Origin: Eutreptiella sp. 'Long Island Sound 2002'
Taxonomy: Eukaryota > Protista > Euglenida
Assembly (NCBI GenBank): GCA_964036045.1
Contig: OZ038378.1
Coordinates: 162,750,001-162,814,000, forward strand
Direction of reading: 5' to 3'
DNA: 64,000 nucleotides
Made by a program: the position numbers and the translations under genes. The notes below the pieces were generated by a model. It was not told the DNA's origin. It did not search any database and saw nothing but the letters and a program-made list of their open reading frames with translations. Below are positions 4,934-59,258 of the stretch, piece after piece (position 1 is the stretch's first letter; each line of letters begins with the position of its first letter).

Positions 4934-5036
4934 ATGGGGATCTCGAACTTCTTATTTATTGGCGTCGGATTGCTCTTATCGGTCTCTTGTGCGTTGTTGT
5001 TGTTCATTTCTTCTACTTCGAGGACGGACAATGAAG
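4934..5036 (+). CDS. Exon 1: N-terminal signal anchor (MGISNFLFIGVGLLLSVSCALLLFISSTSRTDNE)
   Basis: ATG at 4934, a ~20-residue hydrophobic stretch, and a phase-1 donor GAAG|GTGTGC at 5037. Confidence 0.65.
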
Positions 5037-15784: not shown

Positions 15785-18700
15785 CACGGACTGTGCAGCA
15801 CGGATGACCAGGGAGACCACACAGTGGGTGTTGTGCTCCCAGAACAGTGCCACACACCCAGAACACCCAGTGCATTCCTCAGCTAGTGGTGCTCTTCTCC
15901 CTGTGCCATTTGTGCAGATCGTCCACAGCAGTCGAAACGTTTCAGAGTGACGTATGCAGAGACAATTGACCTCCTGATGCCCATTAATCACAGTATCGGC
16001 CTCAAGCAATTGCATGTCGCAGTGCCCCACATGGAAATTGTGTCCGTAAGATTGGATCATTTGCCAGTGAAGCAGCAAATTGAGCTTCTGGCAGACACAG
16101 GTTTGTGCCAGCACCCCCCCCCCCACCCACCACCATGTGTTTGTGAAGAATCAGGGGCCACATTTCCGCATGGTGTAGTTCCAAGTGCCTCCACACTCCG
16201 GACCACATTTGTGGATTGGGCTGTGGCTCGGTTGGAGCCCCACACCCCGACATGCAAACCCCCTTCAGTATTGCAACCTTTGTGATCGCACACATATCAT
16301 GCCCTGAGTGTTGTCCCTTTGTGACGAAGCAGGGGCCACGTGTCCCCAATCTGTCACATAGCAGGGACCAAACTTCCACACAATGTGTGAGGAGCAGGGA
16401 CCAAACTTCCACACAATGTGTGAGGAGCAGGGGCCACACTCCACACAATGTGTGAGGAGCAGGGGCCACACTCCACACAATGTGTGAGGAGCAGGGGCCA
16501 CACTCCACACAATGCGTGAGGTGGCAGGGGCCACACTCCACACAATGTGTGAGGAGCAGGGGCCACACTCCACACAATGTGTGAGGTGGCAGGAATCACA
16601 TTTCCGCACCATGTGCGAGGTGGCAGGGAACACGTTTCCACGCAATGTGTATGGGGACAATGCCAAACAGTGTGTGAGGGAGGGAGGAGGAACAATGCCA
16701 CACAATGTGTGAGGGAGCAGCGACCACACTTCCATGCAATGTCTGAGGGAGTCTGAGGGAGCAGGGACAATGCGTTGGTGCATTTTCCTGCTTACCCCAC
16801 CCCCTACCCCAGGGCTTCTTTAGAATAATTAAAAACCAAGGGGGGGGGAGCCCTCCCCCAAAACCCCCTCCTCCCCTCCCCCCCCCCTGCTCAAAAGAAG
16901 CCCTGCCCTATCCCCAACCTCATCCTACTTTTTGCGTTTTCTGGTTCTTTAGTAGACAAAGGCCTAAGTTGTATCTTGCTTCTATCCACTCCCTGAGCAG
17001 TACTTATTTCCTTTCTCCACCTCTCAGTTCCAAGTCCCCTCGTGTTTTTAGGCAGAATGGTTTCTAACACTGAATTTGAATCGGATGGCACCAATTCATT
17101 TAGCCCTGACAAGAAGCCGCAGTGTGTGTTTGGGCAAAGGTGGGGCTGGTGCCAAGCATCGCACCATGTTGGTGAACTCGACTGTGGCACATTTTCCAAA
17201 CAAACCCCTCTAGGAACACGAGAACTGGCAAAACAACCCATTTGTGTCGTGTTCCTCAGGTAGGGAGCCTGTGGTACACCAAACAAAGAGTTTTGTGGAC
17301 ACACATCTCGGTAGAAGGTGCCATTATTGAAGGCAAGGGTCCTTTGACTCGTGGGGGCTGTGGTCTGCCGACCCAAGCCCAGTGCCTAGAGCCTTCGGTG
17401 ACACGGCCTGTGATGCTCTTGTTCTCTGCACCGCAATCAATGTTGCCGCAGATGTCCTCGTGGCCCCCAAAGGGGACCCTCTGTACAGTCTGGTGCATTT
17501 GCGCGAGGGGGCAACGGTGATCGAGGCCATTAGCCGCCCGTACCCGTACTACAACGAGACGTTAGTGTTCCTGGATCCCGCCGCGCTGTGCCGTGCTCTG
17601 GGTCTAAAGTACAGGCAATACTTTCTGACGCACGTTGGGCAGGCCTGGGAGCAGCCAGCACCGAATGCCACCCATCTCGCGCTTCTCCTGGAGGAGGCGT
17701 ATACCTCACACAAGGTCTCCCTTTTCCTCCAGTCTGCTGTTTCCAAGGGGCTCCAACCGCCCGATCCGTCCGCCTCACGACATCACTGAGCAACCCCAGG
17801 GGCAATGCAGGGGTCTCATAAACCATCCCCATCCAACCTCTTGACCCCCCCACCTCTTCATGCAGCAGACGCTTGCGGGGCTGCAGGGGGACTGAGCTGC
17901 AGGGAGAATGGAAATGTGTGCTTCCAGGGCCAGATTTCTTTGCATGTCTGCTTCACCCAGAGTTTTCGCCGGTGTCCGAGAATGTCTGCAGTGCCCGTGA
18001 GTTTCTGCCTCAAGTTTCTCCCCTTCGGGTACTGACCAAGATTCAGCACCACCAGCGGAGGAGACATGCCCCCCCCCCCCCCGCTAGAATGTTGGGGTTT
18101 ACCAGGGTGCCGGACAAAGCTGACCTGAGGGAGGGTCGCAGGGAGGCTAGAGCATGATATGCCGTGCATTGCACGGTATCATGTGGCGTTGTGCTCAGCA
18201 GGGCGGACATGCACCGATGCTTTGCCACATTTCTGTTAGACTTCGCCATTTGTGCAATGGCTCGAATGGCTTATGGCCTCCCACCTTCAAGTAGTCAGGA
18301 AACCATTGCCCATCACCTTCGGCTCAATCCCAAATTAAAGCGCAAACCAAATCAAATCAGTTCAAAGAAATTGTGATCTGCGGTCGGGCTCATCCAGCTT
18401 TCATCCACCCGCACCCTCTCCCCATGCCCCGTGTGCCACCAACCGATGATCAGAGACGTCAGATGCGGGAAAGGACCGCATGTCATTTCAAGTACTGGTG
18501 CGCATGCAACATCGCAACGCAAGCCCATCGCAAACGGCAGGGGATGGCAGGAGGACTCAACAGCAAGGCACAGCACACCCAACACCCTGGGCTTCTGTTG
18601 TGTGAACCTTTTTTTTGATGGAGGTTTGGTTCAGTGTTCGCGGCAATGCACTATCAGAACAAAAACTCTTGCAAGCCAATGGACTTAGCAGCTGTGGGCT

Positions 18701-21700
18701 GAAGGCAGATTAGGAGCTGTGGGCAGGCTGTTGTAGTACATCTGTGAGTCCAATGCCCTGGTACATGCTATTCTTGAAAATGATGAATTTAATGAGGAGA
18801 ATGCTGATCAGGATATCATGCGTTTGTATGGGGACGTTAGGAACAACAATGCCATGCCCCCCCACAGAAAGTTGAGCTGATTGAGTCTGTATCAGATTCT
18901 GATGTAGAGTTGCAAGATGTGGAATCTGAGTTACTGGAACACGTGGAATCAGAAGCACTATCCAAACTAGCGTGTAGCAACAAAAGCAGGTCACACAACA
19001 GACATGGCACTGGACACCTCGATGGGTACCGCCCGGCACTGAGCAGCCTTGCGCTTGGAATTCCGCTTCCCTCCTCCCTTCCTGAGTTGCAGAGTGTGGT
19101 ACACTCAGGCGGGGGAGACAGTCTCGGTAGGCAGGCTTTCCCCTGAGTTGGGCCTTGGTTTGGATTTGGGCTGCAATGGAGCCCTTCAGAGGTAGATTGC
19201 GTTTTAGACCCTGAGTGGCTAGCGCAGCTAAGGATCACCAATGCCATTTGAAGTCTCTGAAGAACTTGCCTGCAAAAAAATCTGAGCACAACGGAATGTC
19301 GCGCAAAGTGGGTGCACAACTAAGGTCACGTATGGAACTTGAAGTCTTCAAAGAAGTTGCAGGCAAAATCAGATCACAACTACTCACCATCTGGAATGTC
19401 ATGCCAGGTGGGTGCACAACGTAGTTGATGACATCCATGGAATGTAGAGTGTGGCCTTGTTTGTGAAATTATGAAAGATGGCCAGAAACGACTGGGGACC
19501 GATGTGCCTGTGGACATAACTACTGCAAGAAATAGCACAGTGACTAAATTTGGCCTCCGAAAGAAGAGCCTAATTCCAATAGGGGTGGTTGGACACTGGC
19601 GCTCTAACCCCCCACCCCCCCTTTTCGGAGAAGTTTTCCTCCGGCCTCGGAAGAGCCATGTCCCACCAGGCCTTGGGAACAATTCTTGGTTCCTAATGCT
19701 ATTTGAAAAACAAGCTGTACTGCTGCACCCTTGTCTTTTGGTACATGCAGAGGGTTGTCGAGCACCGTGGTGCGTTGTGCGGTGTCCTTGCGAGCCACGC
19801 AAACAGGGCATGTGTTGCACAAGGAAGCAAGCACATGGCTACCAAAACCACTGCTCAAAACAAACTTCTGCCGGAGACCGCATCCCTTCGGTGCACAAGA
19901 TGGGGAACAGCAAATGGTCCGCTGTCCATGGTAACATGTGTGCCTGTCACGTGTAAGCGCGGCATTGTCTAAGCAGAGGATCCCTGTCTGCCCCTAGTTT
20001 CCGCTGACCAGGGCTGTGCAAGGGGGCATCGGACTCATTGACCATGGCCATCTCTCTGCCAGAGACTCACAGATAGACCCAAACGACTTGCTTTTTCCAG
20101 GGGCATCGGCAAGACAACTCCCAAGCAGCGCCTGTGCGATTTTTGTCGCCGCAGACTCTTGGGTGTGAAGGCGTCAAGCTGTGGTCCACGCCCATCAAAT
20201 TCGGAGGTTGGGGGGATGGCCATTCCAAAAATGGCTGGTGGAAACGCGTCTGGATCGTGAGCCCAGGCGTGGCCAAGGTCCCGTTCAGGTGTGCATGTGC
20301 TTTCATGACCCCTCAAGTGGGTCGCGTGCGCATTGTTTTCGAACGGCCGAGGCTGCTCGACCCCATTTCGGGAGGGGTTTGGGCGTGTCCTCCAGCACTG
20401 GCAAGAAAGTCCGTCCGAGACCAACCCCCCTCCACGGGGGGGGGGGGGCGGCCGGGCTCGGTCCTTGTATGCGACCCCCCCCCCCCCCCCGAGTTTTGAA
20501 AGATAGCGGTGCAGGGGCCATGGCGCCAACGGCGCCAACTTTTTTGTTGCATGCTTAATTGAAGGGGGTACTATGCCTTTAGTCCTTAAGACCCTTAAGA
20601 CTTTCTTCCTGGCAAAGACGAGAAATCGCTCTCATCGCATACATGACCCCCCCCCCCCCCCACAAGTTTTGACAGATAGCTGGGCGGTGGGTCGCATCAG
20701 GACCGTGCCCCCCTTCCCCCCTCCCCCGTGCATGCCTGGACATGCAGCGCACCGCTGATGGGCAACACCTGGTGATCTGGAACCCCCTGGCCCTGTAGGC
20801 ACTGTGCGCGTCCATAGTAGTGGAGAGCAGCCTTCGGATTTCGCGGTGATGAGAACGATTGCATGTGACGCCTGCCGGTGGATCCCCTTTCCTGAGTTGC
20901 GGAGTGTGGCGGACTCAGGCGGGGCTGACGGTCTCGGTAGGCAGGCTTTCCCCAGAGTTGGGCCCTCGTTTGGATTTTGGCCGCAGTCGAGCTTCTCGGG
21001 CCCGAAGCGAAACTTTCTCTTCAGTTGCTTATGCTGTAGTGCTGCCTGGTGCCAGTCATACAGCACCAATTCTGATTCGGAAGAGTCTGCTGGAGGGCTG
21101 CATAGACCAAATCCTCGGAACAAATTTGCCATAGCAATGGAATCGCCGTGCGCCACTGTGTGGGCAAACGCCGAGCTGCCACCCACTGGTAGCACTCGTC
21201 CTCGGAGCGGCTGCCCGGGCGAGTGATAGTGCTCCAGTACGATACTAATGCCCAAGCAATGCCCTCCTGGACCAATGTTTTTTTGTTTTAAATTGTCCGC
21301 AGGGCCAAGTTTTAACTGGCAGCTCATGGCCCCCCGGTCGGTTGCGTGTTGAGTTATTGTATCAAGCTTTGGTGGCCAAAAATCTGCGGTTGGGGTGCGG
21401 TAGGGTAAGCCCCCAAAAGGAAGGAATGCCAAGGAAGGCGACTGCAGCGCCTTACAAAACGGGCGGTCCCATGACCCGGAGTGGCAAGGTATGGTCCATG
21501 GTACTGCCCCAAAGTGTCCCGCGTGTTGGTGATGCCAGGGGTACCCCGGGCCATTCGCACACACCCCCTCCCAGGCGTTCGCGAGCCCTGTCACGCCCAC
21601 CCTGAGGCCCATTGCGACGAGCCAACCCCCCATCCAACCCAGGCACGGCTCGGTTGTGCCAGTGTTCCCGTTGCAAGCGATGCGTACCGCTTTCGATTCC

Positions 21701-24700
21701 CCATCCGCACGAACACTGACGCACGATCTGGTGCCATGGTGTCCGTCCCGACCATGACTCGATCGGAAGCATCGGCCGGACCAATGTTATTGCTACGCCG
21801 CCGGATGCAATGAGTGCCCCAGTCTGCAAGCGCAACGGCCTGTAGGTGTCCATTCTGGTTCGTGTTTCCAATGGAGATAGGCTGAGAGCCACGCCTCCTC
21901 CTCCTCCTCCTCCTCCTCCTCCTCCTCCTCTTCCTCCTCCTTTGCAAGCCTGTTTTGGTGCAGACGTGGCAAGGCCACCATACCCGCCCTGCCCTGCATT
22001 GTATTGCACGACCAGAAGGCATTACAGCCCCCATCCGTTGCGGATGTCCGTCCTCGTGCATGCGCAACCCCCAAAGGCCCGTGCTGCCGCCTGCTCGGCT
22101 CCATTCGTATTAGGATTGGGTGGTCACCATAAAAGTGGTTGCCACTCAACATGCCGGGAGTGAGCCTTGGGAGGGGTGGTATCAAAAGGGTCAAATAAGA
22201 TGGGCGCAACGTAGACTGCACACGCATACCCTACACACACCCAACAATCCTTCCACATGCCATCCTCCCGTGTAAACCCCGCGACCCGCAGCCCTGCCCG
22301 ACACCCGCTCCCCTGTCCAGGGCCAGCAGCAGCTATTGGGTTCGCATGTGGCGTGAAATCGAGGCAATCCGCAACTTTACAAACCCTTTCACCGCGAAAC
22401 TGCTCGGGTTGTGCAGTGACAGTGTACGGAACAAGTACCTGTTCATGCAGGAGTCGCTGCCGGGGGATATGGATGTATGTTTCTGCTACGCGCAGTGCTG
22501 GTCTTCCAGTTTTCCGGTCAGCATGTTGTTGCTGATGCAGACGTCCCTGCTGCAGCTGCTCGTTTGATGGTTGTTGCCTGACGCTTGGCATAGCCCTCGC
22601 ACATGCCAATGCCCAAGCTAAGCTGGCAGCTTGACCCAGCAAGGCCCACAGGTGTTGGGTTTAGGCGAAGCGGAGGAGGGCGTCGCAACACACTTCGGGA
22701 CGTCTGATAGAGCAGGCATCTCCCGCTGACTGTACCCTCCGTTCACACACCCCAAGGCCCCGTCCTCCCCCTAATTTTCAGGGAGCCAGGAGGCTCTGCA
22801 GACTGCACACGAGCCACAAAGCAGCTTGCATGAGGTGTTCTCACAGCTTTTCGAACCTGAGCATTCATGCCTTGAATGATTTGGAGCGTGTTGGCGATCA
22901 GTTGTGCATTGTGGGTTGCCCTCCCCTGAAGGCCCCATGAGACCAGACCACCCTACCCAGCAGGGTGCCAAGGGAGACGGGTATGGAAGCCGAAACCTGG
23001 ATTCACCCAAGGTCAAATGGTGTGATAGAAGCCTTGCCGCACCACCCAACGCAGCTGGCAGTGCCAAACTCAGGGGGTGCAACCGGTGCGGACTTCTGGG
23101 GCGAGCATGAGAACAGGTCAATCATGCGTACATGCGGGGGAAACAGTAAATGATGGGCACCTGCTCGACAGAGTGATCTGCCTATGACTCGAAATGGAGA
23201 CGTGCAGACTACAATTTTTGATACTGTTTAGGGCTTACGGAATGCAATGTGCGGTACTGGGCAAGAACTTGGAGAGACGTTGGTGCATATGCAAGATGTT
23301 GTGCCACCGGAAGAAGGGGTTCTTCACAGGACCAGCTGGCCAATGGGCCTATTGGCACGCACAGCTGTCACCATGGCACCAGCTTCTGTGTTTTATGCCA
23401 ATGTTACTCTGCACGTTTGAGTTGTGCAAGTGGTCTAGCACAACGCCGGAGAGCATTTTTGGTCTGGGTAACCCACAGCTTTGTCCAACGACCACCCGCT
23501 GGTCGCTATAAAATGTCTAACGACCGAGGGGAAGTGGCGTAATGCGGCGAAACATCGTTGGCCGTTGCGCGAGAGAGGGGGCGGGGGGGGGGATGCATCT
23601 CGCCCGTCTGCAACCCCAACCCCCGAACCCGATACGGCTATCGTTTGGCCATAGGTACCTATCGTTCGGCCATGGGTACCTATCGTTCGGCCATGGGTAC
23701 CTATCATTTGGGCATAGTTACCTAGCCTTTGGGCATAGGTACCTATCCTTTGGGCATAGGTACCTGTCCTTTGGGCATAGGTACCTATCGTTGGGCCAGA
23801 GGTACGTATTGTTTCGGCATCGATAACTATCGTTTGGGCACAGGTACCTATCGTGTGGCCATAGGTACCTATCATTTGGGCATAGTTACCTATCGTTTGT
23901 GCATAGGTACCTATCGTTTGGGCATAGGTACCTATCGTTTGGGCATAGGTACCTATTGTTTGGGCATAGGGTAGGGTTTATGTATCCTCGCCGCCTTGGG
24001 GACCCTCAAACGGCAGGGGTGATGCGGCCATGTATCTTGAAACAATGCCAAAACATGCACAACACCCAAGCACAAGACAGACATGTGACAGGGTCGTTCC
24101 AGTGTCCTCCACAGCTATGCCAAATCCAAGGCACCAAGTGCGCGAGCAACAGCCAAGACAATGTTTGGGCTCCAGTTTTGGGCTCCAGTTTTGGGCTCCA
24201 GACCCCCCCCCCCTTGAGGAGATCTGTGGGCGCAGGTTTTGGTTGACCTTTTCCCCATAGGCTCTTCCCGCGCCTCACTGCTGCATTCCGCTCCTCTCCC
24301 TTCCTGGCCGCGCTCTTCAGGCCCTTACAAACAACACCTTTGTAAATGCACTGTCTGGCTATCTGCATCTTTGGCCAACTCAAAAGCAGGTACCTATCTC
24401 TCATGTATTGAAGTGAAGTGACCAAGCACCTCGGAGGACACCTTGGATCCGCCCCCCCCCAGCCAGGGATGCATTGGAAGGGGGGGGGTACCCCCCCCCC
24501 CCCCTCGAGGGCGCCCAGTCTATGCCCAGCTGGTGTCTCCCTGACGCCGAGTGCCGGCTTCAATGGCATTTGTAGCCGACAGTATCCGCCCCCAACCGCT
24601 TTGGCAGCCTTCTCCAATCGCCTGTGTGACCGCGTCTATGGCCGCCTCTGAGGCCCCTTCCCTTCTAATGCATCCCTGCCCCCAGCCCCCGTCGCCTTGC

Positions 24701-27700
24701 CCACATGCGGTATTGTTCAGCATCAGCCGTCCACAATACAGAAGGTTCCATGCACAAAACTTGAACAACTATGGCATCCTGGAACCATCAGCCATTCCAT
24801 TTTTCCTGGCCTAAATCCTTCATCCCCCCGCCTTTCTTCCGCGTACTTGGATGGGCACAGAGAAGAGGATCTGCAGGAGAGAGTGTGCCTCCGCCACCAA
24901 GGGCCCCCAGCCTTTGGGGCAGGTGCTATCCGTATGGGGCAGCGGCACCACTGCCATGCCCAGCGCCAGGGCGGTCCTGAAGGAACCCACCCCCAGGGAC
25001 CACCAAGCGCCAAACACCAACCGCCACCAACCGCCAATCGCCAATCGCCACCAACCGCCAAACACCAACCGCCACCAACCGCCAATCGCCAATCGCCACC
25101 AACCGCCAAACACCAACCGCCACCAACCGCCAATCGCCAATCGCCACCAACCGCCAAACACCAACCGCCACCAACCGCCAATCGCCAATCGCCACCAAGC
25201 GCCAACCGTCAACCGCCACCAACCGCCAATCGCCAATCGCCACCAACCGCCAACCGTCAACCGCCACCAACCGCCAATCGCCAATCGCCATCAACCATGG
25301 TTGAACATATGCGCTGCACGCGGTCTTTTTGCAAAACTGCCGTTGCGGAACGCCTTTTTTCCCCCTCTCTTGAGGACCGCCCTGCCTAGTGCTGCACATT
25401 TAGAGCTGCGATGAGTGTGATGACCTCCGCAAGCCTCACCAGTCTGAACGCCTACAAGCGGATCCCGTCCTGCGGTGTGGCGGCTCCGCCCCGACCTCTT
25501 GCATGATGTGTCGGACTGTGCGCCACCGCCCGTGTCCGTTCAACACGTTGGCACACACCCGGACATCCGCAGCTGTTGTGCGAACTTTGATGGCCGTGAC
25601 TGCGTGTGGGTGAGCGCAGACACTCCACTTTGCCCAGTGTCCCCAGTGCCCCCATTGAGGACCATGAACGGACATGGCGGGGCGCGTGTGCGTACCCAAG
25701 GGCTTGGGTGTACTTCACTGCCTCCGGCAAGGGCCGTGGTGGTTCTCAGCCCCGAGTCCAGCGCGGGGCAGCCTGAGACGAGTTGATTGGCCTGTCGAGT
25801 GCCCCCGTACGCAGGTGGCGCATCAGTGGACGTCGATATGGTGCTGGGCACACTCCTGACCCATCCTCTCGTCTTTTAATTCGGCGGAACGTCTTTGGGT
25901 TGGGGCGGATCCTTCCTCCGCCATGCGTGGGCCCAAATGCCGCTGTGCGCAGGGGCGTGTCGCGTGCGCTGCACAGCTGCGACCTGTGCTCATGGAGTGC
26001 GACTGGGCACCGGTCGAGCGCCGCACAAATGGTCCGGGCACCGCCCGCGCGTTGTACTGCGCTGCCGCGCGTGGAGACGGTGGGGCGTTCCCCCGCAGCG
26101 GTACAGCGGCAGTGCCGGAGGACGGGCGGTGGGTAGTTTGGTGCAGCGGTTCACTGGTGGTACACTGTCGAGCACAACGGTGCGCGTGCAGCGCCGTACC
26201 ACACCGGAGGTGCGCCGACCATTCGGGCAGTGTACAATGGAGCTCAGCGGTGCACAGTGTACAGGGGGTGGCACGGTCACGTGCCGCGGTGTGTAGGTGG
26301 TGCATAGCCAACTGCAGCAGGGCAGGCGGCGGGACAATCCCCTGATCAGGGTCTTTTCTGAGTGTGTGTCCTACCCTACGGGGGGGGTGGGAGCCCATCA
26401 GGGGCAGACCAACCGTGAGGGGGAAAAGGACATATGGTGGACGGCCCGGACAGCGCGTGGAGGAACAGGGCACCTGGGCCTCACAGAAACACAGCGAGGC
26501 AGGCTATGGACGGCCTGTGGACAGAGGTGTGTGGACAGCAAAAACAGTCAAACGACCCTGGCAACAACCACCACATCCTCAATACGCCAACTACTGGGCG
26601 CCGCTGACACGCAAACAGCACACCATGCCACATCCAGCACAGTCCCAACACACCAACTACTGGGCGCCGCGGACGCGGAAACGACACCAGCAAGAGCACC
26701 GGCTGCAGCAGCTGACAGACAGCAGCGACTCGACGCAACATGCGAAGGGAAGAACGGGTGACTGTCCAGGGCCCTGTAAAGGAGCAACAACCAGACGGAA
26801 TGTCACACAGGGGGTGGATTCGTCAGAATTCCTGAGTGGGTGGGTTTCCAACGCCCCTCCCCCCCCCTCTCCCCGTAGGGTAGGCGATTGTGGGGGACTT
26901 TGGGTCAGCGCCAAAGGCGCTGGTTGAGGCATTTTGCCGGTGGTAAGGCATTTTTCCTGTGGTAGTTGGGTGGGTGGGTGGGTGGGTGTCCAATAGCCCC
27001 CCCCCCCCGTGGGGGGTGGGGCATTTGTGGGTTTTGCCACAAATCTGTGGTGGGTGGGTCCCTCAAATCACACCCCCCCCGCCCCCCCCCCCCCCCCGGT
27101 GGTTAAGCACAACCCCGCCCCTGATGCCGTGGCGGCCACCTCCGTGAGATGCCCTGTGCTACGGTGCGTGCCGGCAGGTCCTGTACGCCTTCTATGGCGA
27201 CGCGGGTGCCAAGAACTGGCGCTTCGCACGCGACGGGGGTCTCCGGATGTTCGACTTCGACAGCCTGTTCATAGTCCTGGCGAACACGGCCTGCGGATCG
27301 GAATCGTATTGCGGGGGTGGCGGCGGGCGGAAGACGTCCGCCTGCGTGCAGGGCCGCTGCGACCCGAAAGGTGCGTGATTGCCATACTGTAAGCGAAGGG
27401 ATGCCACCCCAGTCTAGCAACTGGAACCAGCCCCCCTCCACCTCCCCCCCTTTTCCAAGGCGCGGCATGCCCCACGTGCGTACTCGGACGGACCGCATTG
27501 ATTTTGGGGGCCTGATTGCCATTTGCTTCCAAATGTGGCGCTGCAGTGGACAATGCCGATCGAGTTGGAAGTCAGTGATTTGCTATTTGCACCGTGGTGC
27601 GTGTCTTTATGGCCATTCTGTTCGACCCTTGCGGCGTGGTCTCTTTCGTTGTTGTTGTAGTTGTTGTTGTAGTTGTTGTTGTTGTTGTTGTTATTACTGT

Positions 27701-27723
27701 TGTTGTTGTTGTTGTTGTTGTAG

Positions 27724-27757
<34 letters not shown>

Positions 27758-27836
27758 GTTGTTGTTGTTGTCATTGTTGTTGTTGTTGTTGTTGTGTTGT
27801 TTTTGTTGTTGTTGTTGTTTTTGTTGTTGTTGTTGT

Positions 27837-27914
<78 letters not shown>

Positions 27915-27947
27915 GTTTATTGTTGTTGTTGTTGTTGTTGTTGTTGG

Positions 27948-28025
<78 letters not shown>

Positions 28026-29879
28026 GGTTGTTGTGGTTGTTGTTGTTGTTGTGTTGTTTTTGTTGTTGTTGTTGTTTTTGTTGTTGTTGTTGTCATTGTT
28101 GTTGTTGTTGTTTTTGTTGTTGTTGTTGTTGTTGTTGTTGTTATTGTTGTTGTTGTTGTTGTTGTTGTGGTTGTTGTTGTTGTTGTTGTTGTGGTTGTGG
28201 TTGTTGTTTTTGTAGGTGGTGTTGTTGTTGCTGTTGTTGTCCGCCTTGTCCACGATCTCATGACACCAATGCAGAACCCGGGCGTCGGGTGCAATGGTCT
28301 CGACTGTAGTCCGCCGTCTCGCATGCGTTGTGCAAAGCTGCACATTGATATTGTTGCCGGTGGGTAGTGTTTTGCTGGGAACGGGTACGCCCCCGCCGCT
28401 GCTTACGCGTTGAACGCTCATGAATTGTCGCCTTGGTGTTCTGTTGCCCGAATGCCGGGCGCATGCGGATGTACTATTAATGGTTTTTTTTGGATTGAGC
28501 AGAATGGAAAAGATGCCGTCTCATTCGGTGTCCAGCAGTGCAGGAGGGTATCGTTGAGATCGGCCCAACGTGACGACACGAGGGAGGTTCGTCAGGGACA
28601 GCGTGCGGTAAATCAGGGGTGCTCAAGTGGACAAGAATTTTGTTTCCGTTTTCTCAGTGAAGAACACTCCAGACACCCGGTGTTTGGCGAGTGGCGGGCC
28701 ACCGCCGGCGGTTGAATGTTCAAAGACATTTGTCAGTGGTCAACCGGTCAACCGCTGGCCAACCCAATTTCTTTTTCCGTCTCGACGTCTGGCCTTGTGT
28801 GCACCGTTTGGAGACGAGGCCGCTGCGTCCGAGCGGGCGCACAAGGGCCGGCACAGTTCACTCCGTCGAGGGAGTTCGGGGAAGGGGAAGCCCCCCCCCG
28901 TATCGAGACGCGCACTGTCGCCTGGACCGTCTGGGCGTCTCCCGCGCTGGGGAGGGGGGGGGGGGCTGCCTCCAAAGCTGCTGCAACGGCGTCGTACCGA
29001 AGCCCCTTCCGTCGCCCATTCGGACCCACGGCGTTGTGCAGGGGGTCGTGGCCCCGACGGCGATTGCACCGTCCCGACCGTAGTGCCCTCACGGCAGACG
29101 GCAACGAGGCTGCCCGGGACGCCCCCACAGAGAACGGCGGAGGGGCGGCAGACCGGTGGGGGGCCGCTCCCTGAGAAACGGACGGAAGTTGAGAGGAGCG
29201 TGTGAAGAGTCGAGTCCGGGGGCACCACGGCGGACCGCCTGGGGTCGCATGCTCTGCAGGACAGACGCAATGAGGGGCAGTGCCCCCCCCGAGGCGCGTC
29301 GTTGAGACGCATTTTGTCTGATGGAAGGAAGGGAATGCCCCGGGCGTTCGTCACCCCGTCTTTGCTTTCCTTTTCTTTTTTTTGCGCTCATGAGTGCCCT
29401 CAGGCAGCGCGCAAAACAACCGCTCGACCACCGTTGGTTGCCCTCCATCCGCTTTCGGTTCGCTGTCCTACCGCCTTCGGTTACCCTCCAACCGCCGTCG
29501 GTAACCGCTCGAAGATGACTGAGTGCAAGTCACCCGCTTTGTTTTTCCCGCATGAGGGAGCGCCCTGGGAATGCCACCGTGACGGAGATGAAACGCCCTG
29601 CGCATGCGGCCCCGAGCCCAGACCCGCGGCCTGCGTTGTTCAGGGATGCTGGAGATCCAAGGCGGGTGGATGCAGACGTTTGTGCAGGAGGTGCTCCGGA
29701 AAGTGCCAGCGGAGCTCCAAGCGGTGCCTGAAGTGAAAGCGTTTCATAAGAAGGTCGTTGGTCAGCACAAGTGCAGCCGCGAAGAGCTGTCGCAGTTTGT
29801 GCAGTTCGTAGTGGGGCACACCAACATTCAACCGTCATTCAGAGGGGCCAGGCATCCGGAAGGCGAGGGCAGGGGCTGA
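4934..29879 (+). CDS. Multi-exon gene: signal anchor + GT61 glycosyltransferase + PKDCC/POMK-like kinase, about 820 aa (manual model)
   Basis: Exons: 4934-5036, 5824-6070, 6544-6607, 6961-7177, 7421-7572, 7969-8061, 8135-8299, 8999-9146, 15883-15946, 15994-16100, 17452-17714, 20155-20288, 22321-22474, 24321-24389, [25815-25840 and 26326-26350 tentative], 27178-27370, 29644-29879. All junctions are GT-AG and phase-compatible. Total 2460 nt, one open frame. Exons 3-4 and the two micro-exons are the weakest parts. Confidence 0.7.
5824..6070 (+). CDS. Exon 2, luminal N-terminal region
   Basis: Lies inside ORF 5790..6137. C-rich acceptor ...tcacaag| in phase 1 (NAGNAG alternative at 5827). Strong donor GTATGT at 6071, phase 2. 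Confidence 0.6.
6544..7177 (+). CDS. Candidate exons 3 (6544-6607) and 4 (6961-7177)
   Basis: Phases run 2-0 and 0-1. Donors GTGAGG (6608) and GTGTGT (7178). Peptides TSNWCTAGRFHHKSETAFGPW and RPRMDPVQNLY...QFIKEILDCDMPIIYKYL...YPHI. An alternative acceptor exists at 6496. No family motif is recognised. Confidence 0.45.
7421..9146 (+). CDS. GT61 domain exons 5-8 (7421-7572, 7969-8061, 8135-8299, 8999-9146)
   Basis: Spliced peptide ...PGLYYAYQ|YLVEVFDMPERQLLVM...|...LGRSLQFHRACWGPRLE|AAHYLWHGGYFIP... is colinear with POMGNT2 as I recall it (PLFYTLRQF...RLFFM...LGRLLCFSHAFVGL...WYQYGFVQP). Junctions are canonical; the 7421 acceptor has a long poly-T tract. Confidence 0.72.
9610..10680. repeat. 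Three diverged copies of a ~70-bp motif
   Basis: ca(t/c)catttggtgacaa.ggg.g.acat...tgtagcac at ~9619, ~10240 and ~10593. Confidence 0.75.
11102..11602. repeat. ~500-bp self-inverted module left of the palindrome
   Basis: gcggggttagggaccc...tatttggggtcgggaaacac (~11102) is the reverse complement of gtgtttcccgaccccaaaatagg...cccctaaccccgc (~11558-11602). An inner pair lies at ~11222/11465. Confidence 0.7.
11685..14023. mobile_element. Giant palindrome / foldback element with arms of about 1.17-1.19 kb
   Basis: Arms are reverse complements; ORFs 11728+/13694- and 11784-/13608+ give near-identical peptides. The centre is between 12875 and 12876 in gattagaggatat-gtat-atatcctctaatc. No coding homology is visible. 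Confidence 0.9.
14073..14550. repeat. ~480-bp self-inverted module right of the palindrome, related to 11102-11602
   Basis: 14073-14200 is the reverse complement of 14428-14550 (gatgtcatgccc.attttta.cccttccaa.ccctttgtaggccccaaaa). Confidence 0.7.
15097..15782. repeat. (GT)n microsatellites
   Basis: Runs near 15097-15130, 15522-15544 and 15753-15781. Confidence 0.95.
15883..17714 (+). CDS. GT61 C-terminal exons 9-11 (15883-15946, 15994-16100, 17452-17714)
   Basis: Peptide VQIVHSSRNVSD|IGLKQL...VRLDHLPVKQQIELLADT|DVLVAPKGDPLYSLVHLREGATVIE...LCRALGLKY fits the DUF563/GT61 pattern (R.I.N...EQ..L....DVLV..HG..L..L..GA.VIE..A..LGL.Y). The 16101-17451 GT-AG intron rebuilds a GAT (Asp) codon. Alternative: a single exon 15918-16100. 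Confidence 0.8.
16350..16740. repeat. 30-bp minisatellite
   Basis: Unit cacaatgtgtgaggagcaggggccacactc, about 10-12 copies, degenerating rightwards. Confidence 0.92.
16810..16905. mobile_element. 96-bp MITE with CAGGGCTTCTTT termini (hAT-like)
   Basis: TIR cagggcttcttt...aaagaagccctg. Flanks ccctaccc and ccctatcc form an 8-bp TSD with one mismatch. Confidence 0.7.
20155..24389 (+). CDS. Kinase N-lobe exons (20155-20288, 22321-22474, 24321-24389)
   Basis: TLGCEGVKLW...NGWWKRVWIVSPGVAKVPFR|ASSSYWVRMWREIEAIRNFTNPFTAKLLGLC...YLFMQESLPGDMD|ALTNNTFVNALSGYLHLWPTQKQ. Contains a Gly-loop equivalent GWWKRVW, a beta3 Lys (VAK) and an alphaC Glu (REIE). Phases 0-2, 2-0 and 0-0; donors GTGTGC, GTATGT, GTACCT. 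Confidence 0.8.
20433..20730. mobile_element. MITE-like element with CACGGGG...CCCCGTG ends
   Basis: Imperfect TIR around ggtcc.t..atgcgacc / ggtcgcat.aggacc. Related pieces at ~56200-56305 and ~57955-58083. No TSD seen. Confidence 0.6.
21896..21942. repeat. (CCT)n microsatellite
   Basis: About 15 units. Confidence 0.95.
23636..23970. repeat. 21-bp minisatellite
   Basis: Unit cataggtacctatcgtttggg, about 15 copies. It produces the spurious GHRYLSF repeat ORFs. Confidence 0.93.
24464..24678. mobile_element. 215-bp MITE with a 19-bp TIR and 7-bp TSD
   Basis: cagggatgcattggaaggg...cccttctaatgcatccctg (one mismatch). ccccagc flanks both sides (24457-24463 and 24679-24685). Confidence 0.85.
25009..25298. 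repeat. 48-bp minisatellite built from caaccgc/caatcgc heptamers
   Basis: About 6 copies of accaaccgccaccaaccgccaatcgccaatcgccaccaaccgccaaac. Confidence 0.92.
27178..27370 (+). CDS. Kinase catalytic exon
   Basis: VLYAFYGDAGAKNWRFARDGGLRMFDFDSLFIVLANTACGSESYC...CVQGRCDPK. Catalytic D...N, DFD in place of DFG, and Cys pairs like PKDCC (PC...DC...C..GWC). Bounded by cag| and |GTGCGT. Confidence 0.8.
27648..28236. repeat. ~590-bp (GTT)n microsatellite
   Basis: Near-pure GTT with occasional 1-nt slips; lies in the last intron of the GT61-kinase model. Confidence 0.98.
29644..29879 (+). CDS. Terminal exon of the kinase domain
   Basis: Acceptor gttgttcag|, phase 1, matching the previous exon. Peptide GMLEIQGGWMQTFVQEVLRK...REELSQFVQFVVGH..., stop TGA at 29877-29879. 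Confidence 0.7.
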
Positions 29880-32606: not shown

Positions 32607-35054
32607 TGGAGGGTGGCGCCAGGCCGCGTGTGTTGCTATCCTCGGTGTATGAGAGGCGGCTGTGTGGATATGATCAGGAGATCTGGGGATGATGGCCTTT
32701 GCAACACTTCCTGCAGCAACTGGTCTTATGAAGTGACAAGAAGCTGGCCAACGAGCCCCTGGTGATGCCCTCAGAGTACTTGCGGAGAAAAGGTGGCTCA
32801 CACACTAATGACACTGCTTGTCTTGCTACCGTTGGTTCACGCCGCGTGCACTAGTAGAAGGTATGCGCATCCCAGGGACAGTGTGGATGTATCCATGGAC
32901 TCGGTGTGTTCGCATGGGCTGTGTTAGCGAGCCGAGACCGGGCGCACTGTGCGCGCACCATGCAGGCTGCTCTTCTTGTTTGTGGCCGTAGCCTAGTGTT
33001 TTGCTTCTTTCAGTCCTCAGGCACGGTGCTCTCCTCACGGCACACGGGACATAAGTTTGGATGCGCTTTCTCTGCACGTACATGCTTGCCCTTGCTTCTC
33101 GTTGGTTTCTCCACATTCATCTCCCAATCCTGGTGCCCATCACCAAAGTCTTCTTTAGCTTGCCAGTGGTGCGAGCAGCTTGAGGTCGTGGTGAGGCCAA
33201 AAATCATCATCACCCTGTCTAATTGCTGTTCTCGTGCAGGGAAGTTCCAAGTTTCAGAGTTGTGGACCAGGTACCTCCGAGACGTAGGGCATGCTGTTCA
33301 GGCAGTGCGCATGCAGTGCAAAGTTTTGTATATTGGTCAACTCTACTTCCACTTGACTCTATTTTGCATTTGCAGGCAGACCAGGTACCAACCCTATGGT
33401 CCATAGCCTCATGTGCCCGAGTCTCTTTGGGCACAGGAGGAAGCCTCTAAGGAGGATGAGGACAACGATGGTGGTGTTTGCTGCCAATTGTGTGGCCACC
33501 ATTCATTCAACTACATTCAAGTACAAGGATGAAGGATGCACTCAGCTGACTATTTTCCATGTGGCTATTGCTGCTTTGCCCTGTTGTCCAGGTGACTGGT
33601 GTTGGATGGGCTTCCCTCCCGGTCGAATTCACTGCATGTGCGCAGTGTGCACGCAGTGCATCGACTTTCTCTGGGGGGCAAGGGTTTGCTACAATTTGTT
33701 GAGAAACTTGCATTTTTGCGCAGACCCTTCATTTTCCCTGACCAGGGCTGTGGGTTGCGCAAGCAGTCACAAATACGGAGGAATGTGGAAAAAGCATAAC
33801 CGACTCCTTCCATTCGGAGGAATTGATGGGCACATGAATTTGTTTGCCAAGAGCCTGTCTGTGTGCTACTGCAGTAGTCAATGCTTGCTCGGATTGATGA
33901 CGCGTGAGAGTGCTGATGGCAGATCAGTGGTTTCACTGTTGATACATTTCTGTAGTGCAGCAGAAGAGGATTGGTGAGGAATCTGTCAAAATCCCGGTGC
34001 CGGGCCAGAATTCAGCATATAAGCCCTTATCCCAAGAATTTGTAATTCTGCGGATGATACTTGTGCTGTCTGCGACCGAGCGTGTATGCCCGTGGTTGAG
34101 TGTTGAAGTAATGAGGCTTCCAATCATTTGTGGAGGACATTTCTGATATTTTCATCGATTTTCTATAAGGCTGCAGAGCAATCGAAAACACCGAGCACAA
34201 ACATCACCATATAAATCATTATAAATCATAAATCATGATAAATCATTCATTCAGGCCAAACGATTTCTGCTCGAATTCCCCGTCAACTTCAATAGGACAG
34301 TGTCGGAGGCCTCTGTGGTCAATGTTTTCTCACCTCTGGCATGCCGTTCGCAATGATGGGTGCTAGGTTGCAAACAATGATGACGACTTTTTCATGCGAT
34401 GCTCTACAGCTCTCCTCAAATTGTCGGTCTGATGCAGAAGAGTATTTTCACAGAACAATGGTGTGTGGGGAAGTGTTGGACGCTCGAGGTTGCAAGGAGG
34501 GGCAAAATGAAGCGTGGAAACAGTTCTTCACAAATCCATCAACTAGTTTTTGCCGGGGACTGGACCCATTTATCGTACGAACCCCCAAACCTACAAAAAC
34601 CCAACCGCCTCCCACCGCACCGCAAAGTCTCACCAGTGATTTTACGTGATTTTGGGACCTCAAGCCATATGATTTGTGCTTTTTCACTGTTGTGCAAGCT
34701 GAATGGTTCCTGTCCATCTATGGCATGGACCATGCTCCAATTGGACTTGCCTTTGCCTCTGTGGCTTGTCAATCGAACACTGGGATTTGAGAACCGATCC
34801 CCAAATGGTGATGGTGAGTGAAAATCCCTCTCAGTTTACATCGCAAATTATTTGGAGGGAGGTGGAGTGCAAACAAGGAGCCAATGATGGAATTTCATGG
34901 GATCTCTCAAACAAGTGGGACATGCCATCATCATACAATTCCGCCCCGGTGTTGTGCATGAGGCTACAACCCGGGGACCTGCCCCCCCCTTCCCGTTCTG
35001 ATGGTGGAATGGTGCCTTTTTGATGTCACAGGCACTTTTGTTGTGCCCCGGCTC

Positions 35055-36725
35055 ATGATGGGGCACATTGCTCTGCTCCCTCATCTGCTCGTAAGCGCCC
35101 TCTTTGTCGTATCCCTGGGGTTCACATCGGCCACGCCCACTGAAAAGCCCACGCCGGACCAGTTGTGGGCCAACTTCACACGGAACCACAACGACTGGCT
35201 CCAGGGCCAACAGTACTGCCTCAAATGGTGCAAGAGGGCGCAGCTGAATGCAACGGCCAATGTTTTCAGCGATTTTGAGGTTGGGTCCGGGAGCTGGAGC
35301 CGTGCCATGGCACTCCCGCCCTACGAGGGCGAAAACCAGCAGAACACCGCGCGCGTATTCAACCGGACCTGCTGCCACGTGTGCACTCAGGAATGCTTCA
35401 CCACAGTTCGCGACAGCCGCGCGGAGGAGCACACGGCAGACGTGACGCTTGCGACGGTGGTCACAATGGAACGGCTTGATGCGGTGGTGCAGATGCGGAA
35501 GGTCTGGTCAGGACCCATGGTGCTGATGTTCTACTTTCTGGTGCTTCCCACTGGGCCCACCAACAACACTGCCGAGGTTGCAACTGCGCGGCAGCAGATC
35601 CGCACCCTCGTGGCCAAATGGCCCCAGACGCTGGTGCTGGAGTACGTGCACCGCTCTCACCTGGAGCTGCCGCTCCTGCCCATTAACGCGCTGCGCAACG
35701 CAGCCCTGGATTGCGCGCGCACGCGCTACCTTTTCCCGGTGGATGCCGACTTCCTTCCGTCGGTGGGGATGCACGATGCACTGCAGAATGCTGCACGCGA
35801 GCTCCTGAATAAGGGCGCGCGCGCGCTCGTCGTGCCGCATTTCGAAGTTACGGAGTGTCGCGTCGTAGTGATGCGGCTGAAGACAGCGGATGAGTATCCA
35901 AGAAACTTCACAGCGCTGCACCAGATGCTCGGTCAAGGCGTTATGCGGCCGTTCCATGCCGAGACATTAGAGATTCTCACAGGCCTCCGAGGGCTCCCGA
36001 AGAATTACGGGTGCCCGAGGAAACCGCCGCAGCTCGTGCACAACATTGAGGGCATCCGTGTCACGCGATATGACCTGTGGTACGACGCGAGTCGCGTGCT
36101 CGAGGGACGGAACGCGACGGAGCTGCCCAGGGGACGTCCATGGCCGGCGGGTAGCATGGGCAATGCGACGGAGTGGTTCCAGCTCGATGCGTCTGAAACC
36201 GATAACCTCTGCGACAGAAAGAACCCAACCTACATCGACCGGTGGGAGCCGTACGTGTGCTTCGGCCGTGTGTCCGCTAAGGGGCTGGTGATGCGCTACA
36301 ACGAACTGCTCGTGGGGCGCTTCTACAACAAAGTGCAGCTCGTTTCGGCGCTGAGGGCCAAGCGCTTCCGCTTCTACACGCTGCTGCGGCACTTCCTGGC
36401 GCACAAGTCCCACAGGCCGTCCCGCTGGCAGCGGAAGCTGGGGGGCTGGTTCGCGGTGCGCATGCGGCTGCTGGTGGACAGCAGCTTGAGGGACGTCAAG
36501 CGCAGTTTCGGCGGCTGCGATGCGAACAACCTCAAGCTGGTGGCGAAAGGGAAAAGGCCCTTGGTCAAAGACAAATTGTTGGTGGAGGTGCGCCCCCTCG
36601 CGCGTGTGTCAGGGGAGACCGGGCAACGGTCCTCGGACATCGGTCCAGCTGAACCGCGCCCCGAGCGCCCTCCTTTGTCGTGTGTGCAGCCTTCTGCCTC
36701 CCTGCCTCCATGGCCCACCCCCTGA
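35055..36725 (+). CDS. GT49-family glycosyltransferase (LARGE C-terminal / B4GAT1-like), intronless copy A
   Basis: Hydrophobic N-terminus from ATG 35055. ADVTLATVVTMERL...WSGPMVLMFY, PINALRNAA...RYLFPVDADFLPS (DxD), ALVVPHFEV, WEPY and YNELLVGRFYNKVQ...HKSH align with the LARGE GT49 domain as I recall it. Confidence 0.9.
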   Translation: MMGHIALLPHLLVSALFVVSLGFTSATPTEKPTPDQLWANFTRNHNDWLQGQQYCLKWCKRAQLNATANVFSDFEVGSGSWSRAMALPPYEGENQQNTARVFNRTCCHVCTQECFTTVRDSRAEEHTADVTLATVVTMERLDAVVQMRKVWSGPMVLMFYFLVLPTGPTNNTAEVATARQQIRTLVAKWPQTLVLEYVHRSHLELPLLPINALRNAALDCARTRYLFPVDADFLPSVGMHDALQNAARELLNKGARALVVPHFEVTECRVVVMRLKTADEYPRNFTALHQMLGQGVMRPFHAETLEILTGLRGLPKNYGCPRKPPQLVHNIEGIRVTRYDLWYDASRVLEGRNATELPRGRPWPAGSMGNATEWFQLDASETDNLCDRKNPTYIDRWEPYVCFGRVSAKGLVMRYNELLVGRFYNKVQLVSALRAKRFRFYTLLRHFLAHKSHRPSRWQRKLGGWFAVRMRLLVDSSLRDVKRSFGGCDANNLKLVAKGKRPLVKDKLLVEVRPLARVSGETGQRSSDIGPAEPRPERPPLSCVQPSASLPPWPTP

Positions 36726-59197: not shown

Positions 59198-59242
<45 letters not shown>

Positions 59243-59258
59243 ACAACAGCAACGTTAA
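58128..59258 (+). CDS. GT49 paralogue copy B, exon 2, ending in an 18-Gln tract
   Basis: Acceptor ctactctcag| at 58127. VSRARKALQTALAEWPQT aligns without gaps to copy A VATARQQIRTLVAKWPQT. The spliced product is 554 aa; stop TAA at 59256-59258. Confidence 0.9.

What the first reader, a model, noticed from the sequence alone, without database searches (positions are those of the whole stretch)
20155..29879. Atypical luminal kinase with an apparently intact catalytic set
It shows VAK (beta3 Lys), REIE (alphaC Glu), YGDAGAKN instead of HRD..N, DFD instead of DFG, and paired Cys in the activation segment. The Cys pattern and LGC..GxxKRVW start resemble PKDCC/VLK and POMK. Its substrate, glycan or protein, is unknown.
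Basis: partly seen in the sequence, partly recalled or inferred. Interest (0 to 1): 0.7.

Follow-up and report, generated by a model that had tools for sequence, protein, structure and literature searches.

The report
Kinase-like tail of GT61 glycosyltransferase
The "atypical luminal kinase" is real, but it is not a gene of its own: it is the five-exon C-terminal domain of a membrane-anchored GT61 sugar-transferase found so far only in euglenid algae, and the fusion suggests that it phosphorylates a sugar chain rather than a protein.

Summary
The exon model needs correcting. There are five GT-AG exons (20155-20288, 22321-22474, 24321-24389, 27178-27370, 29644-29879), which give 261 codons with no internal stop. 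One exon had been missed, and the stretch 'DALCYGACRQ' is intron.

Eight homologues were found. The four that carry source names are euglenid transcripts: two from Euglena gracilis, one from Eutreptiella and one from Ploeotia. They show the domain as the C-terminal part of one ORF, downstream of a GT61 glycosyltransferase domain, and one homologue has an N-terminal membrane anchor. The window holds collinear GT61 exons upstream (from ATG 4934), so this is one ~25-kb gene.

The evidence for a kinase fold is consistent but each piece is weak:
- Lys, Glu, Asp, Asn and Asp-x-Asp are invariant with PKA-like spacing.
- A profile hit falls on JAK1 in the correct register (E 0.03).
- All top fold matches are protein kinases.
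- ESM-Atlas neighbours are kinases, including DIPK1B and POMK.

Pfam finds nothing. The domain fails POMK's defining features and does not match the PIP49_C model that Atlas DIPK1B-named clusters carry. I read it as a new, unannotated luminal kinase-like family.

The most likely function is a glycan kinase working with its own GT61 domain, whose best solved match is POMGNT2. Two LARGE1-like GT49 genes lie downstream. No RNA evidence was found for this copy. The scan had already noted the GT61-kinase fusion on this same stretch (s1-192989).

The parts
4934..5036 (+). Candidate first coding exon: ATG, short tail, 19-residue hydrophobic signal anchor, donor G|GTGTGC
   Evidence: in-frame stop upstream; mean Kyte-Doolittle score 2.7 over 19 residues. 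Homologue P0021 has an equivalent N-terminal anchor. Inferred; no RNA evidence.
6343..6432 (+). GT61 exon (motif ...CLPRLA)
   Evidence: tblastn to P0011, P0021 and P0022. GT61 HMM positions 85-114, E 1.3e-5.
7954..8055 (+). GT61 exon
   Evidence: GT61 HMM positions 139-172, E 0.008; tblastn.
15944..16102 (+). GT61 exon
   Evidence: GT61 HMM positions 219-271, E 5e-8; tblastn to P0021, E 1e-4.
17445..17714 (+). Last GT61 exon (nucleotide-sugar motif region). Donor AAG|GTCTCC in phase 0 joins 20155 in phase 0.
   Evidence: GT61 HMM positions 269-339, E 5.6e-8; sequence. Searches list three possible phase-0 donors (17633, 17714, 17738). The 5' end of this exon was not fixed.
20155..20288 (+). 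Kinase-like domain exon 1: LGC, GWWKRVW (beta1-beta2), VAK (beta3 Lys). No Met. Seven-residue insert relative to homologues.
   Evidence: (P0001, E 3e-5). Acceptor cag|ACT, donor CAG|gt.
22321..22474 (+). Exon 2: alphaC (REIE), conserved N-x-T sequon (NFT), beta4 Cys (GLC), beta5/hinge
   Evidence: P0001, E 4e-13; E 5e-9.
24321..24389 (+).
   Evidence: tblastn; sequence with a pyrimidine-rich acceptor and donor CAG|gtacct; blastp to P0021, E 1e-4; HMM positions 92-122.
27178..27370 (+). Exon 4: catalytic loop YGDAGAKN, DFD, four-Cys activation segment
   Evidence: P0001, E 4e-11 against 1.84 billion proteins; E 1e-25. Acceptor ggcag|GTC is the only one that fits the phase.
29644..29879 (+). 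Exon 5: C-terminal helices and stop codon (29877-29879)
   Evidence: The phase fits (G + GG); codon score. Similarity is weak but collinear: HMM positions 187-240, E 0.07, and to the C-termini of P0002 and P0003.
35001..36725 (+). Context: intronless GT49 ORF, LARGE1-like
   Evidence: Pfam PF13896, E 3e-26. Matches the LARGE1 GT49 domain, E 7e-12.
58161..59258 (+). Context: second GT49 ORF
   Evidence: Pfam PF13896, E 1e-21.

Best explanation
The stretch encodes the C-terminal ~260-residue domain of one large spliced gene (about 4934-29879, + strand). The product is a type II membrane protein with three parts: an N-terminal signal anchor, a luminal GT61 glycosyltransferase domain, and a cysteine-rich protein-kinase-like domain.

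The kinase-like domain keeps the full canonical catalytic set: beta3 Lys, alphaC Glu, catalytic Asp in Y-G/C-D, Lys at +4, Asn at +5, and the metal-binding Asp of D-F-D. I infer that it binds luminal ATP and phosphorylates a hydroxyl on the glycan that its own GT61 domain builds or recognises. That would place two steps of one glycan pathway on one polypeptide. In animals, the GT61 enzyme POMGNT2 and the kinase POMK act close together in a pathway as separate proteins.

What is shown: the exon structure, homology to euglenid GT61-fusion transcripts, invariance of the catalytic residues, and kinase-like fold signals.

What is inferred: membrane topology, catalytic activity, a glycan substrate, and expression of this particular copy.
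For: One gene with GT61:
- phmmer with exon 4 finds P0003 (E. gracilis transcript), P0004 (Ploeotia) and P0011 (Eutreptiella, UniRef A0A7S1HVL4). P0021 and P0022 were added.
- P0004, P0011, P0021 and P0022 carry Pfam GT61 N-terminal to the domain in the same ORF.
- The window has collinear GT61 exons upstream, and their phases fit.
- Exon 1 of the domain has no Met.

Kinase fold:
- The spacing counted from the exon sequences is K-16-E-70-D-5-N-13-D. PKA has 19/75/5/13 (residue numbers).
- Lys, Glu, Asp, Lys, Asn and D-F-D are invariant in all eight homologues, across two subfamilies that share about 30-40% identity.
- The family profile hits JAK1 alphaC-beta5 in register, E 0.03.
- An AF2 model (pLDDT 57) has protein kinases as all top 50 Foldseek hits.
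- VIA-align's listed hits are nearly all kinases in the wide search and all kinases among Foldseek's top matches, Z 5-6.6.
- By ESM-Atlas features, the domain scores 0.95 to 'protein kinase' and DIPK1B clusters. By structure, TM by query is 0.60-0.69 to Pkinase clusters, including POMK (0.66 by query, 0.55 by row).

Luminal location:
- Signal anchor at 4934-5036 and in P0021.
- Six conserved Cys.
- A conserved R-N-x-T sequon.

Glycan link:
- The domain is fused to a glycosyltransferase.
- The GT61 profile matches POMGNT2 best (E 3e-9), ahead of EOGT (E 1e-4).
- LARGE1-like GT49 genes lie downstream.
Against: - No single kinase match is statistically significant. The best are E 0.017-0.03 and Z below 8.
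- Pfam gives no kinase hit even at E <= 10.
- Both AF2 models are poor (pLDDT 57 and 40), and the N-lobe is unresolved.
- There is no glycine-rich loop consensus.
- No RNA run or transcript-derived protein matches this copy. Only paralogues at about 50% identity are known to be transcribed.
- The junction 17714 to 20155 and the first exon rest on splice logic alone.
- The substrate is inferred only from the domain fusion and the gene neighbourhood.
- The GT61 motif region of this subfamily is divergent ('APKGDPLYS' against 'GPSGGNLVN'), so the GT half might be inactive.
Confidence: 0.55

Rival explanations
1. The domain is an active luminal protein kinase (Ser/Thr or Tyr, like Fam20C or VLK) that phosphorylates secretory proteins. 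The GT61 fusion only supplies Golgi targeting.
For: The catalytic loop D-x-x-x-K-N has the basic residue at +4, as in the tyrosine-kinase pattern D-L-A-A-R-N (my own knowledge). The best profile and Foldseek hits are tyrosine kinases: JAK1, FES and TYK2.
Against: These hits are weak and do not discriminate between families. A stable fusion to a glycosyltransferase across three euglenid genera points to a shared glycan substrate rather than targeting alone. The post-DFD region is short (about 110 residues) and Cys-rich, and shows no recognisable APE or peptide-binding elements.
Confidence: 0.18
2. The domain is a pseudokinase or nucleotide- or glycan-binding module that regulates or positions the GT61 domain without transferring phosphate.
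For: It has no glycine-rich loop and no Pfam kinase hit. Many luminal kinase-like proteins are pseudokinases, for example Fam20A (my own knowledge). POMGNT2 carries a non-catalytic C-terminal domain at the equivalent place (my own knowledge).
Against: Every catalytic residue (Lys, Glu, Asp, Lys, Asn, Asp) is invariant across two subfamilies that otherwise share only about 30-40% identity. That degree of conservation is not expected for a dead site.
Confidence: 0.15
3. This particular copy is a silent or decaying paralogue. The family is real, but this locus is not expressed.
For: No RNA run holds the stretch. No protein in the 15-billion-sequence collection matches exon 4 above 56% identity. 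The E. gracilis transcripts found are paralogues. The GT61 motif is divergent. Not all GT61 exons were located. The introns are full of repeats.
Against: All five domain exons are open, their phases are consistent, their splice sites are GT-AG, and they keep every family-invariant residue. The codon score is positive for exons 2, 4 and 5.
Confidence: 0.2
4. The motifs are chance matches in non-coding DNA.
For: Single-exon searches of Pfam and PDB gave nothing. Exon 1 has a low codon score.
Against: Exon 4 alone scores E 4e-11 against 1.84 billion proteins. Five exons are collinear with an independent HMM.
Confidence: 0.01

Closest known systems
POMK / SGK196 (protein O-mannose kinase)
   Same: Both are luminal kinase-fold domains behind a type II anchor. 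Both have D-x-D in place of DFG (DLD in POMK, DFD here). Both have a Cys near the domain start and a Cys in beta4, at the positions of POMK Cys72-Cys139. In the YCD subfamily, a Cys directly precedes the catalytic Asp, as in POMK's MCD, and there is a partner Cys in the activation segment. POMK's pathway partner POMGNT2 is GT61, the family fused here. The ESM-Atlas POMK cluster aligns with TM 0.66 by query and 0.55 by row. VIA-align gives Z 5.1 to 5gza.
   Different: POMK lacks the beta3 Lys, the alphaC Glu and the Asn, and its catalytic loop is five residues longer and contains a helix (PMC5142810). Here all of these are canonical. The window copy has YGD, not xCD. No sequence hit to POMK appears at E <= 10. 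POMK is a separate gene, not a GT fusion.
FAM69/DIPK and PKDCC/VLK (Pfam PIP49_C)
   Same: These are Cys-rich luminal kinase domains with canonical Asp/Asn/Asp spacing (D294/N299/D312 in FAM69A). They have a Cys next to the catalytic Asp that is predicted to bridge to the activation segment (PMC3696010). A DIPK1B cluster is the second-nearest by language-model features: score 0.95, 188 of 256 features shared.
   Different: PF12260 and PF14875 do not match at E <= 10. This domain has no EF-hand insert, a shorter C-lobe, a GT61 fusion, and is known only from euglenids.
POMGNT2 (GT61), for the upstream half of the same protein
   Same: The GT61 profile of the family hits POMGNT2 at E 3e-9, ahead of EOGT at E 1e-4. 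Pfam PF04577 matches in the homologues.
   Different: POMGNT2 ends in a non-kinase domain (my own knowledge). No plant or algal GT61 enzyme turned up in the PDB search, so 'closest' holds only among solved chains. The donor sugar here is unknown.
LARGE1/2 (GT8-GT49 bifunctional enzyme), as a mechanistic precedent
   Same: Two enzymes of consecutive steps of one luminal glycan pathway sit on one type II polypeptide (PMC9917425 and PMC7556876, listed). GT49 genes matching LARGE1 lie 5 kb and 28 kb downstream.
   Different: The domain types differ: two glycosyltransferases there, a glycosyltransferase plus a kinase here.

Membership tests
Protein-kinase-like (PKL) superfamily | beta3 Lys, alphaC Glu, catalytic-loop Asp...Asn and metal-binding Asp at canonical spacing | tested here: met
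   The spacing is K-16-E-70-D-5-N-13-D; PKA has 19/75/5/13. These residues are invariant in the eight homologues and the window.
Protein-kinase-like (PKL) superfamily | Bilobal kinase fold | tested here: inconclusive
   All top 50 Foldseek hits are protein kinases, as are nearly all of VIA-align's listed hits, but with E >= 0.017 and Z <= 6.6 on a pLDDT-57 model. The ESM-Atlas model gives TM 0.60-0.69 to kinase clusters. The second AF2 model was unusable.
Protein-kinase-like (PKL) superfamily | Significant sequence or profile match to a kinase family | tested here: not met
   Pfam gives nothing at E <= 10. The best PDB profile hit is JAK1 at E 0.03, over alphaC-beta5 only.
POMK | beta3 Lys replaced by Ser (Lys supplied from the start of beta2), and alphaC Glu replaced by Gly | tested here: not met
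   The family-invariant Lys (V-A-K here) and Glu (R-E-I-E here) lie at the canonical positions.
POMK | MCD catalytic motif whose Cys bridges to the activation segment; elongated catalytic loop with Gln in place of Asn | tested here: not met
   The window has YGD, with Asn at +5. Only subfamily A (P0004, P0011, P0021, P0022) has YCD together with an extra activation-segment Cys ('CGC').
POMK | Type II anchor and luminal location | tested here: met
   Signal anchor at 4934-5036 and in P0021. It is provided through the GT61 fusion. This is a prediction, not experimental evidence.
FAM69/DIPK-PKDCC (PIP49_C, PF12260) | Match to the Pfam model | tested here: not met
   No hit for any of the 12 sequences at E <= 10. 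The only link is language-model similarity of 0.95 to a DIPK1B cluster, which is a lead and not a test.
GT61 (whole protein) | PF04577 / GT61 catalytic domain upstream in the same ORF | tested here: met
   Pfam hits in P0004, P0011, P0021 and P0022. Window exons match the GT61 HMM at E 5e-8. The profile matches POMGNT2 at E 3e-9.
GT61 (whole protein) | Continuous transcript joining the GT61 and kinase exons at this locus | not testable with these tools
   No RNA run holds the stretch. The link is inferred from phase-compatible splice sites and from paralogous transcripts.

The most novel reading that the evidence does not exclude
Euglenids carry a 'Rosetta-stone' fusion of a POMGNT2-like GT61 with a POMK-like glycan kinase that still has the canonical catalytic residues. 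Together with the neighbouring LARGE1-like GT49 genes, it would build a phosphorylated, matriglycan-like glycan outside animals. If so, the core of the dystroglycan glycosylation pathway would be far older than Metazoa, and this domain would show what POMK looked like before its active site migrated.
Probability: 0.12. Interest if true: 0.85.

Novelty: new variant of a known kind. Interest (0 to 1): 0.6.

Why it matters
Only a handful of luminal (secretory-pathway) kinase families are known, and glycan kinases among them are rarer still (POMK and Fam20B).

This is an unannotated kinase-like family that Pfam does not detect. The one family member with a UniProt-derived name, A0A7S1HVL4, is named only as GT61. 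The domain is covalently fused to a glycosyltransferase in at least three euglenid genera.

The fusion gives a directly testable answer to the question of substrate: look at the product of the attached GT61 domain. It also provides a compact two-enzyme module for studying or engineering phosphorylated glycans in Euglena.

It further shows that exon-by-exon reading of euglenid genomes can mistake the domains of very long, intron-rich genes for separate genes.

Tried and rejected
- Single-exon Pfam and PDB searches found nothing useful. The Xaa-Pro dipeptidase hit (E 0.85) and the DUF3545 hit are noise.
- The word search with exon 4 found no candidates. The Atlas search with exon 4 alone gave no usable hit.
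- Twelve of the 14 remaining phmmer hits in P0005-P0020 match in 4 to 12 short stretches and were set aside as repeat proteins that match 'YGDAGAKNW...'. They were not examined.
- The alternative start at ATG 4912 was rejected, because a stop comes before any GT donor. ATG 4934 was kept.
- The second AF2 job, on a four-sequence alignment, gave pLDDT 40 and was discarded.
- A profile of the YCD subfamily alone found nothing in PDB.
- The JGI metagenome scan found no relatives.
- I laid DNA contigs of a second organism label (X4), hoping to compare substitutions in exons and introns. Its contigs are almost identical to the window (one differing letter in eight listed pieces, in an intron), so no selection test was possible. 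The tiny 'RNA?' runs laid nothing.
- A codon-usage scan could not find the missing exon or the GT61 exons by itself.
Full report
**Observation.**
- LGC at 20158-20166
- GWWKRVW at 20233-20253
- VAK at 20269-20277
- REIE at 22352-22363
- YGDAGAKN at 27193-27216
- DFD at 27253-27261
- four Cys between 27292 and 27360

Reading the DNA around them gives conventional GT-AG introns. Two corrections to the exon model are needed.

It has a strong pyrimidine-rich acceptor and a CAG|gtacct donor.

The five exons are 20155-20288, 22321-22474, 24321-24389, 27178-27370 and 29644-29879. Together they give 786 nt (261 codons plus stop) with no internal stop. I joined the exons only inside that script, to count length, stops, Cys and sequons. 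The joined sequence was not printed or sent to any search tool.

An HMM built from the eight homologues alone matches the five pieces in abutting order: HMM positions 25-48, 49-94, 92-122, 123-188 and 187-240. The strongest E-values are 5e-9 and 1e-25.

**What it belongs to.**
Single exons hit nothing in Pfam or PDB, and the word search was blank. An exhaustive phmmer search with exon 4 against 1.84 billion representatives found six true relatives. A follow-up search added two more.

Those that carry source names are all euglenids:
- Euglena gracilis: EG_transcript_9461 and EG_transcript_2801
- Ploeotia vitrea
- Eutreptiella gymnastica: UniRef A0A7S1HVL4, named only 'Glycosyltransferase 61 catalytic domain-containing protein'

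In P0004, P0011, P0021 and P0022 the Pfam GT61 domain lies N-terminal to the domain in the same ORF. P0021 starts with a hydrophobic anchor.

In the window, GT61 exons lie upstream on the same strand and in the right order: 6343-6432, 7954-8055, 15944-16102 and 17445-17714. The donor AAG|GT at 17714 is in phase 0, and so is the acceptor at 20155. Domain exon 1 contains no Met.

A candidate first exon (ATG 4934, 19-residue anchor, donor at 5037) completes a type II topology.

The 'kinase' is therefore the C-terminal domain of a ~25-kb GT61 gene. This agrees with another first-stage note on this stretch (s1-192989). A paralogous genomic locus, L001, shows matching exon pieces in the same order.

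**Is it a kinase?**
Across two subfamilies that share about 30-40% identity, the following are invariant:
- the Lys of x-K-x-P
- the Glu of W...E...R-N-x-T
- F-x-x-D-x-x-x-K-N
- M-F/Y-D-F-D
- four activation-segment Cys

The spacing here is K-16-E-70-D-5-N-13-D, against 19/75/5/13 in PKA. The PKA residue numbers are those quoted in PMC5142810.

The further evidence is as follows:
- The family profile's non-trivial PDB hits (E 0.03-0.7) are the JAK1 and JAK2 kinase domains, aligned alphaC to alphaC and beta4-beta5 to beta4-beta5. A flavivirus envelope protein ties at E 0.03 and is taken as noise.
- The AF2 model from 12 rows is poor (pLDDT 57, pTM 0.55). Even so, all 50 top Foldseek hits are protein kinases, best E 0.017.
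- VIA-align's top chains are kinases at Z 5-6.6, both in the wide search (where a few non-kinases appear lower in the list) and among Foldseek's best matches. POMK (5gza) scores Z 5.1.
- The ESM Atlas holds P0011. By language-model features, residues 505-789 are nearest to 'protein kinase' clusters (score 0.95, 21 of 30 hits). A DIPK1B/PIP49_C cluster (0.95) and APH, RIO and Kdo families follow.
- By structure, the Atlas's own model aligns to Pkinase clusters at TM 0.60-0.69 by query. These include a POMK cluster at 0.66 by query and 0.55 by row.

Each line is weak, and Pfam sees nothing even at E <= 10. They all point the same way, however. I put a kinase-like fold at about 85%, and an active site that is used at about 65%.

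**Which kinase family?**
The domain is not POMK. The POMK structure paper defines that enzyme by several features:
- a missing beta3 Lys, with the Lys supplied from the start of beta2
- Gly in place of the alphaC Glu
- an MCD motif, disulphide-linked to the activation segment
- DLD in place of DFG
- a catalytic loop five residues longer, with Gln in place of Asn

Here Lys, Glu and Asn are canonical and the loop has normal length.

Some resemblances remain:
- D-x-D in place of DFG.
- A Cys at the domain start and one in beta4, where POMK has the Cys72-Cys139 bridge.
- In subfamily A (P0004, P0011, P0021, P0022), a Cys directly before the catalytic Asp (YCD).

Subfamily A also has an extra activation-segment Cys ('CGC'). 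Subfamily B (the window, P0001, P0002, P0003) lacks both of these Cys. [quoted passage not shown] It amounts to a single evolutionary event, though, and is only suggestive.

The PIP49_C model, which Atlas DIPK1B-named clusters carry, does not match. I therefore file the domain as a new luminal family within the kinase-like superfamily. The POMK/FAM69/PKDCC group is its most plausible, but unproven, kin.

It is formally met, because JAK1, FES and AMPK are the best matches. Those matches are too weak to place the family, however, and the luminal location rests on independent evidence: the anchor, the GT61 fusion, the conserved Cys and the conserved N-x-T sequon.

**Mechanism and context.**
The GT61 profile matches POMGNT2 at E 3e-9 and EOGT at E 1e-4. 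Two GT49 ORFs lie downstream on the same strand: 35001-36725 and 58161-59258 (Pfam E 3e-26 and 1e-21). The first of them matches the GT49 domain of LARGE1 at E 7e-12.

Three enzyme families of the animal core-M3/matriglycan route thus sit in one 55-kb stretch, and two of them are fused. This supports the neighbourhood described in note s1-192982.

The simplest reading is a bifunctional luminal enzyme in which the kinase domain phosphorylates the glycan made or bound by the GT61 domain. I hold the glycan substrate at about 50%. The main rivals are a protein kinase, which the Tyr-kinase-like D-x-x-x-K-N pattern would suit, and a pseudokinase.

**Caveats.**
- No RNA evidence exists for this copy. 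No RNA run holds the stretch, and the runs laid were DNA contigs nearly identical to the window.
- The nearest transcript-derived protein is a paralogue at about 50% identity.
- The GT61 motif region of this subfamily is divergent.
- Several GT61 exons were not located.
- The family was found only in euglenids. A JGI metagenome scan found none, but the searches used a 73-residue query, so more distant members could have been missed.
- Pfam, HHpred and AF2 on the joined protein were left out.

Noticed in passing
window 20300-20900 and 18900-19100: Intron stretches with extreme contig depth in the DNA runs: up to about 50,000 in the 20300-20900 stretch and about 2,300 at 18900-19100, against a baseline of 12-27 in X1. 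There are many joints and loose ends. These are high-copy dispersed repeats inside the introns flanking domain exon 1.
   Followed up: no
window 27648-28240; 23638-23970; 25000-25296: There is a (GTT)n microsatellite of about 199 copies in the last intron. The intron between 24389 and 27178 holds 24/48-bp (6-12 copies) tandem arrays, and the one before it a 21-bp (x16) array. These arrays produce long spurious ORFs (poly-Leu/Cys/Val, and 'PPTANRQS' repeats).
   Followed up: no
window 17445-17520: The GT61 nucleotide-sugar motif region reads 'VAPKGDPLYSL' here and 'LASPADWWCSL' in the E. gracilis paralogue P0003. Subfamily A has 'VGPSGGNLVNL' and POMGNT2 has 'VSMHGAQLVT'. The glycosyltransferase half of this subfamily may have a changed or lost activity.
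   Followed up: partly
window 8962-9060: There is a weak look-alike of the start of the kinase-like domain ('...LHLSGSPLF...EGCQHPF' against P0011 '...MHLSTGPPFIGCQHLF'; tblastn E 0.49). It lies among the GT61 exons. It could be chance or the relic of a duplicated exon.
   Followed up: no
L001 (ENA ERZ25074135, contig ctg10826, 1.9 Mb), 190-10400: This paralogous locus has four of the five domain exon pieces in the same order as the window; the last one was not found. No GT49 was seen in the fetched 20.5-kb locus. The database 'protein' P0009 is a prokaryote-style ORF call that probably reads from an exon into the intron.
   Followed up: partly
window 48697-49686 and 104-1147: There is a reverse-transcriptase ORF (RVT_1, E 4e-9) between the two GT49 genes, and a DUF1963-containing ORF at the window start.
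   Followed up: no
window 22373-22381 and homologues: The sequon R-N-x-T directly after the alphaC Glu is conserved in every family member (NFT, NLT or NVT). It is a likely N-glycosylation site and an independent hint of luminal exposure.
   Followed up: partly
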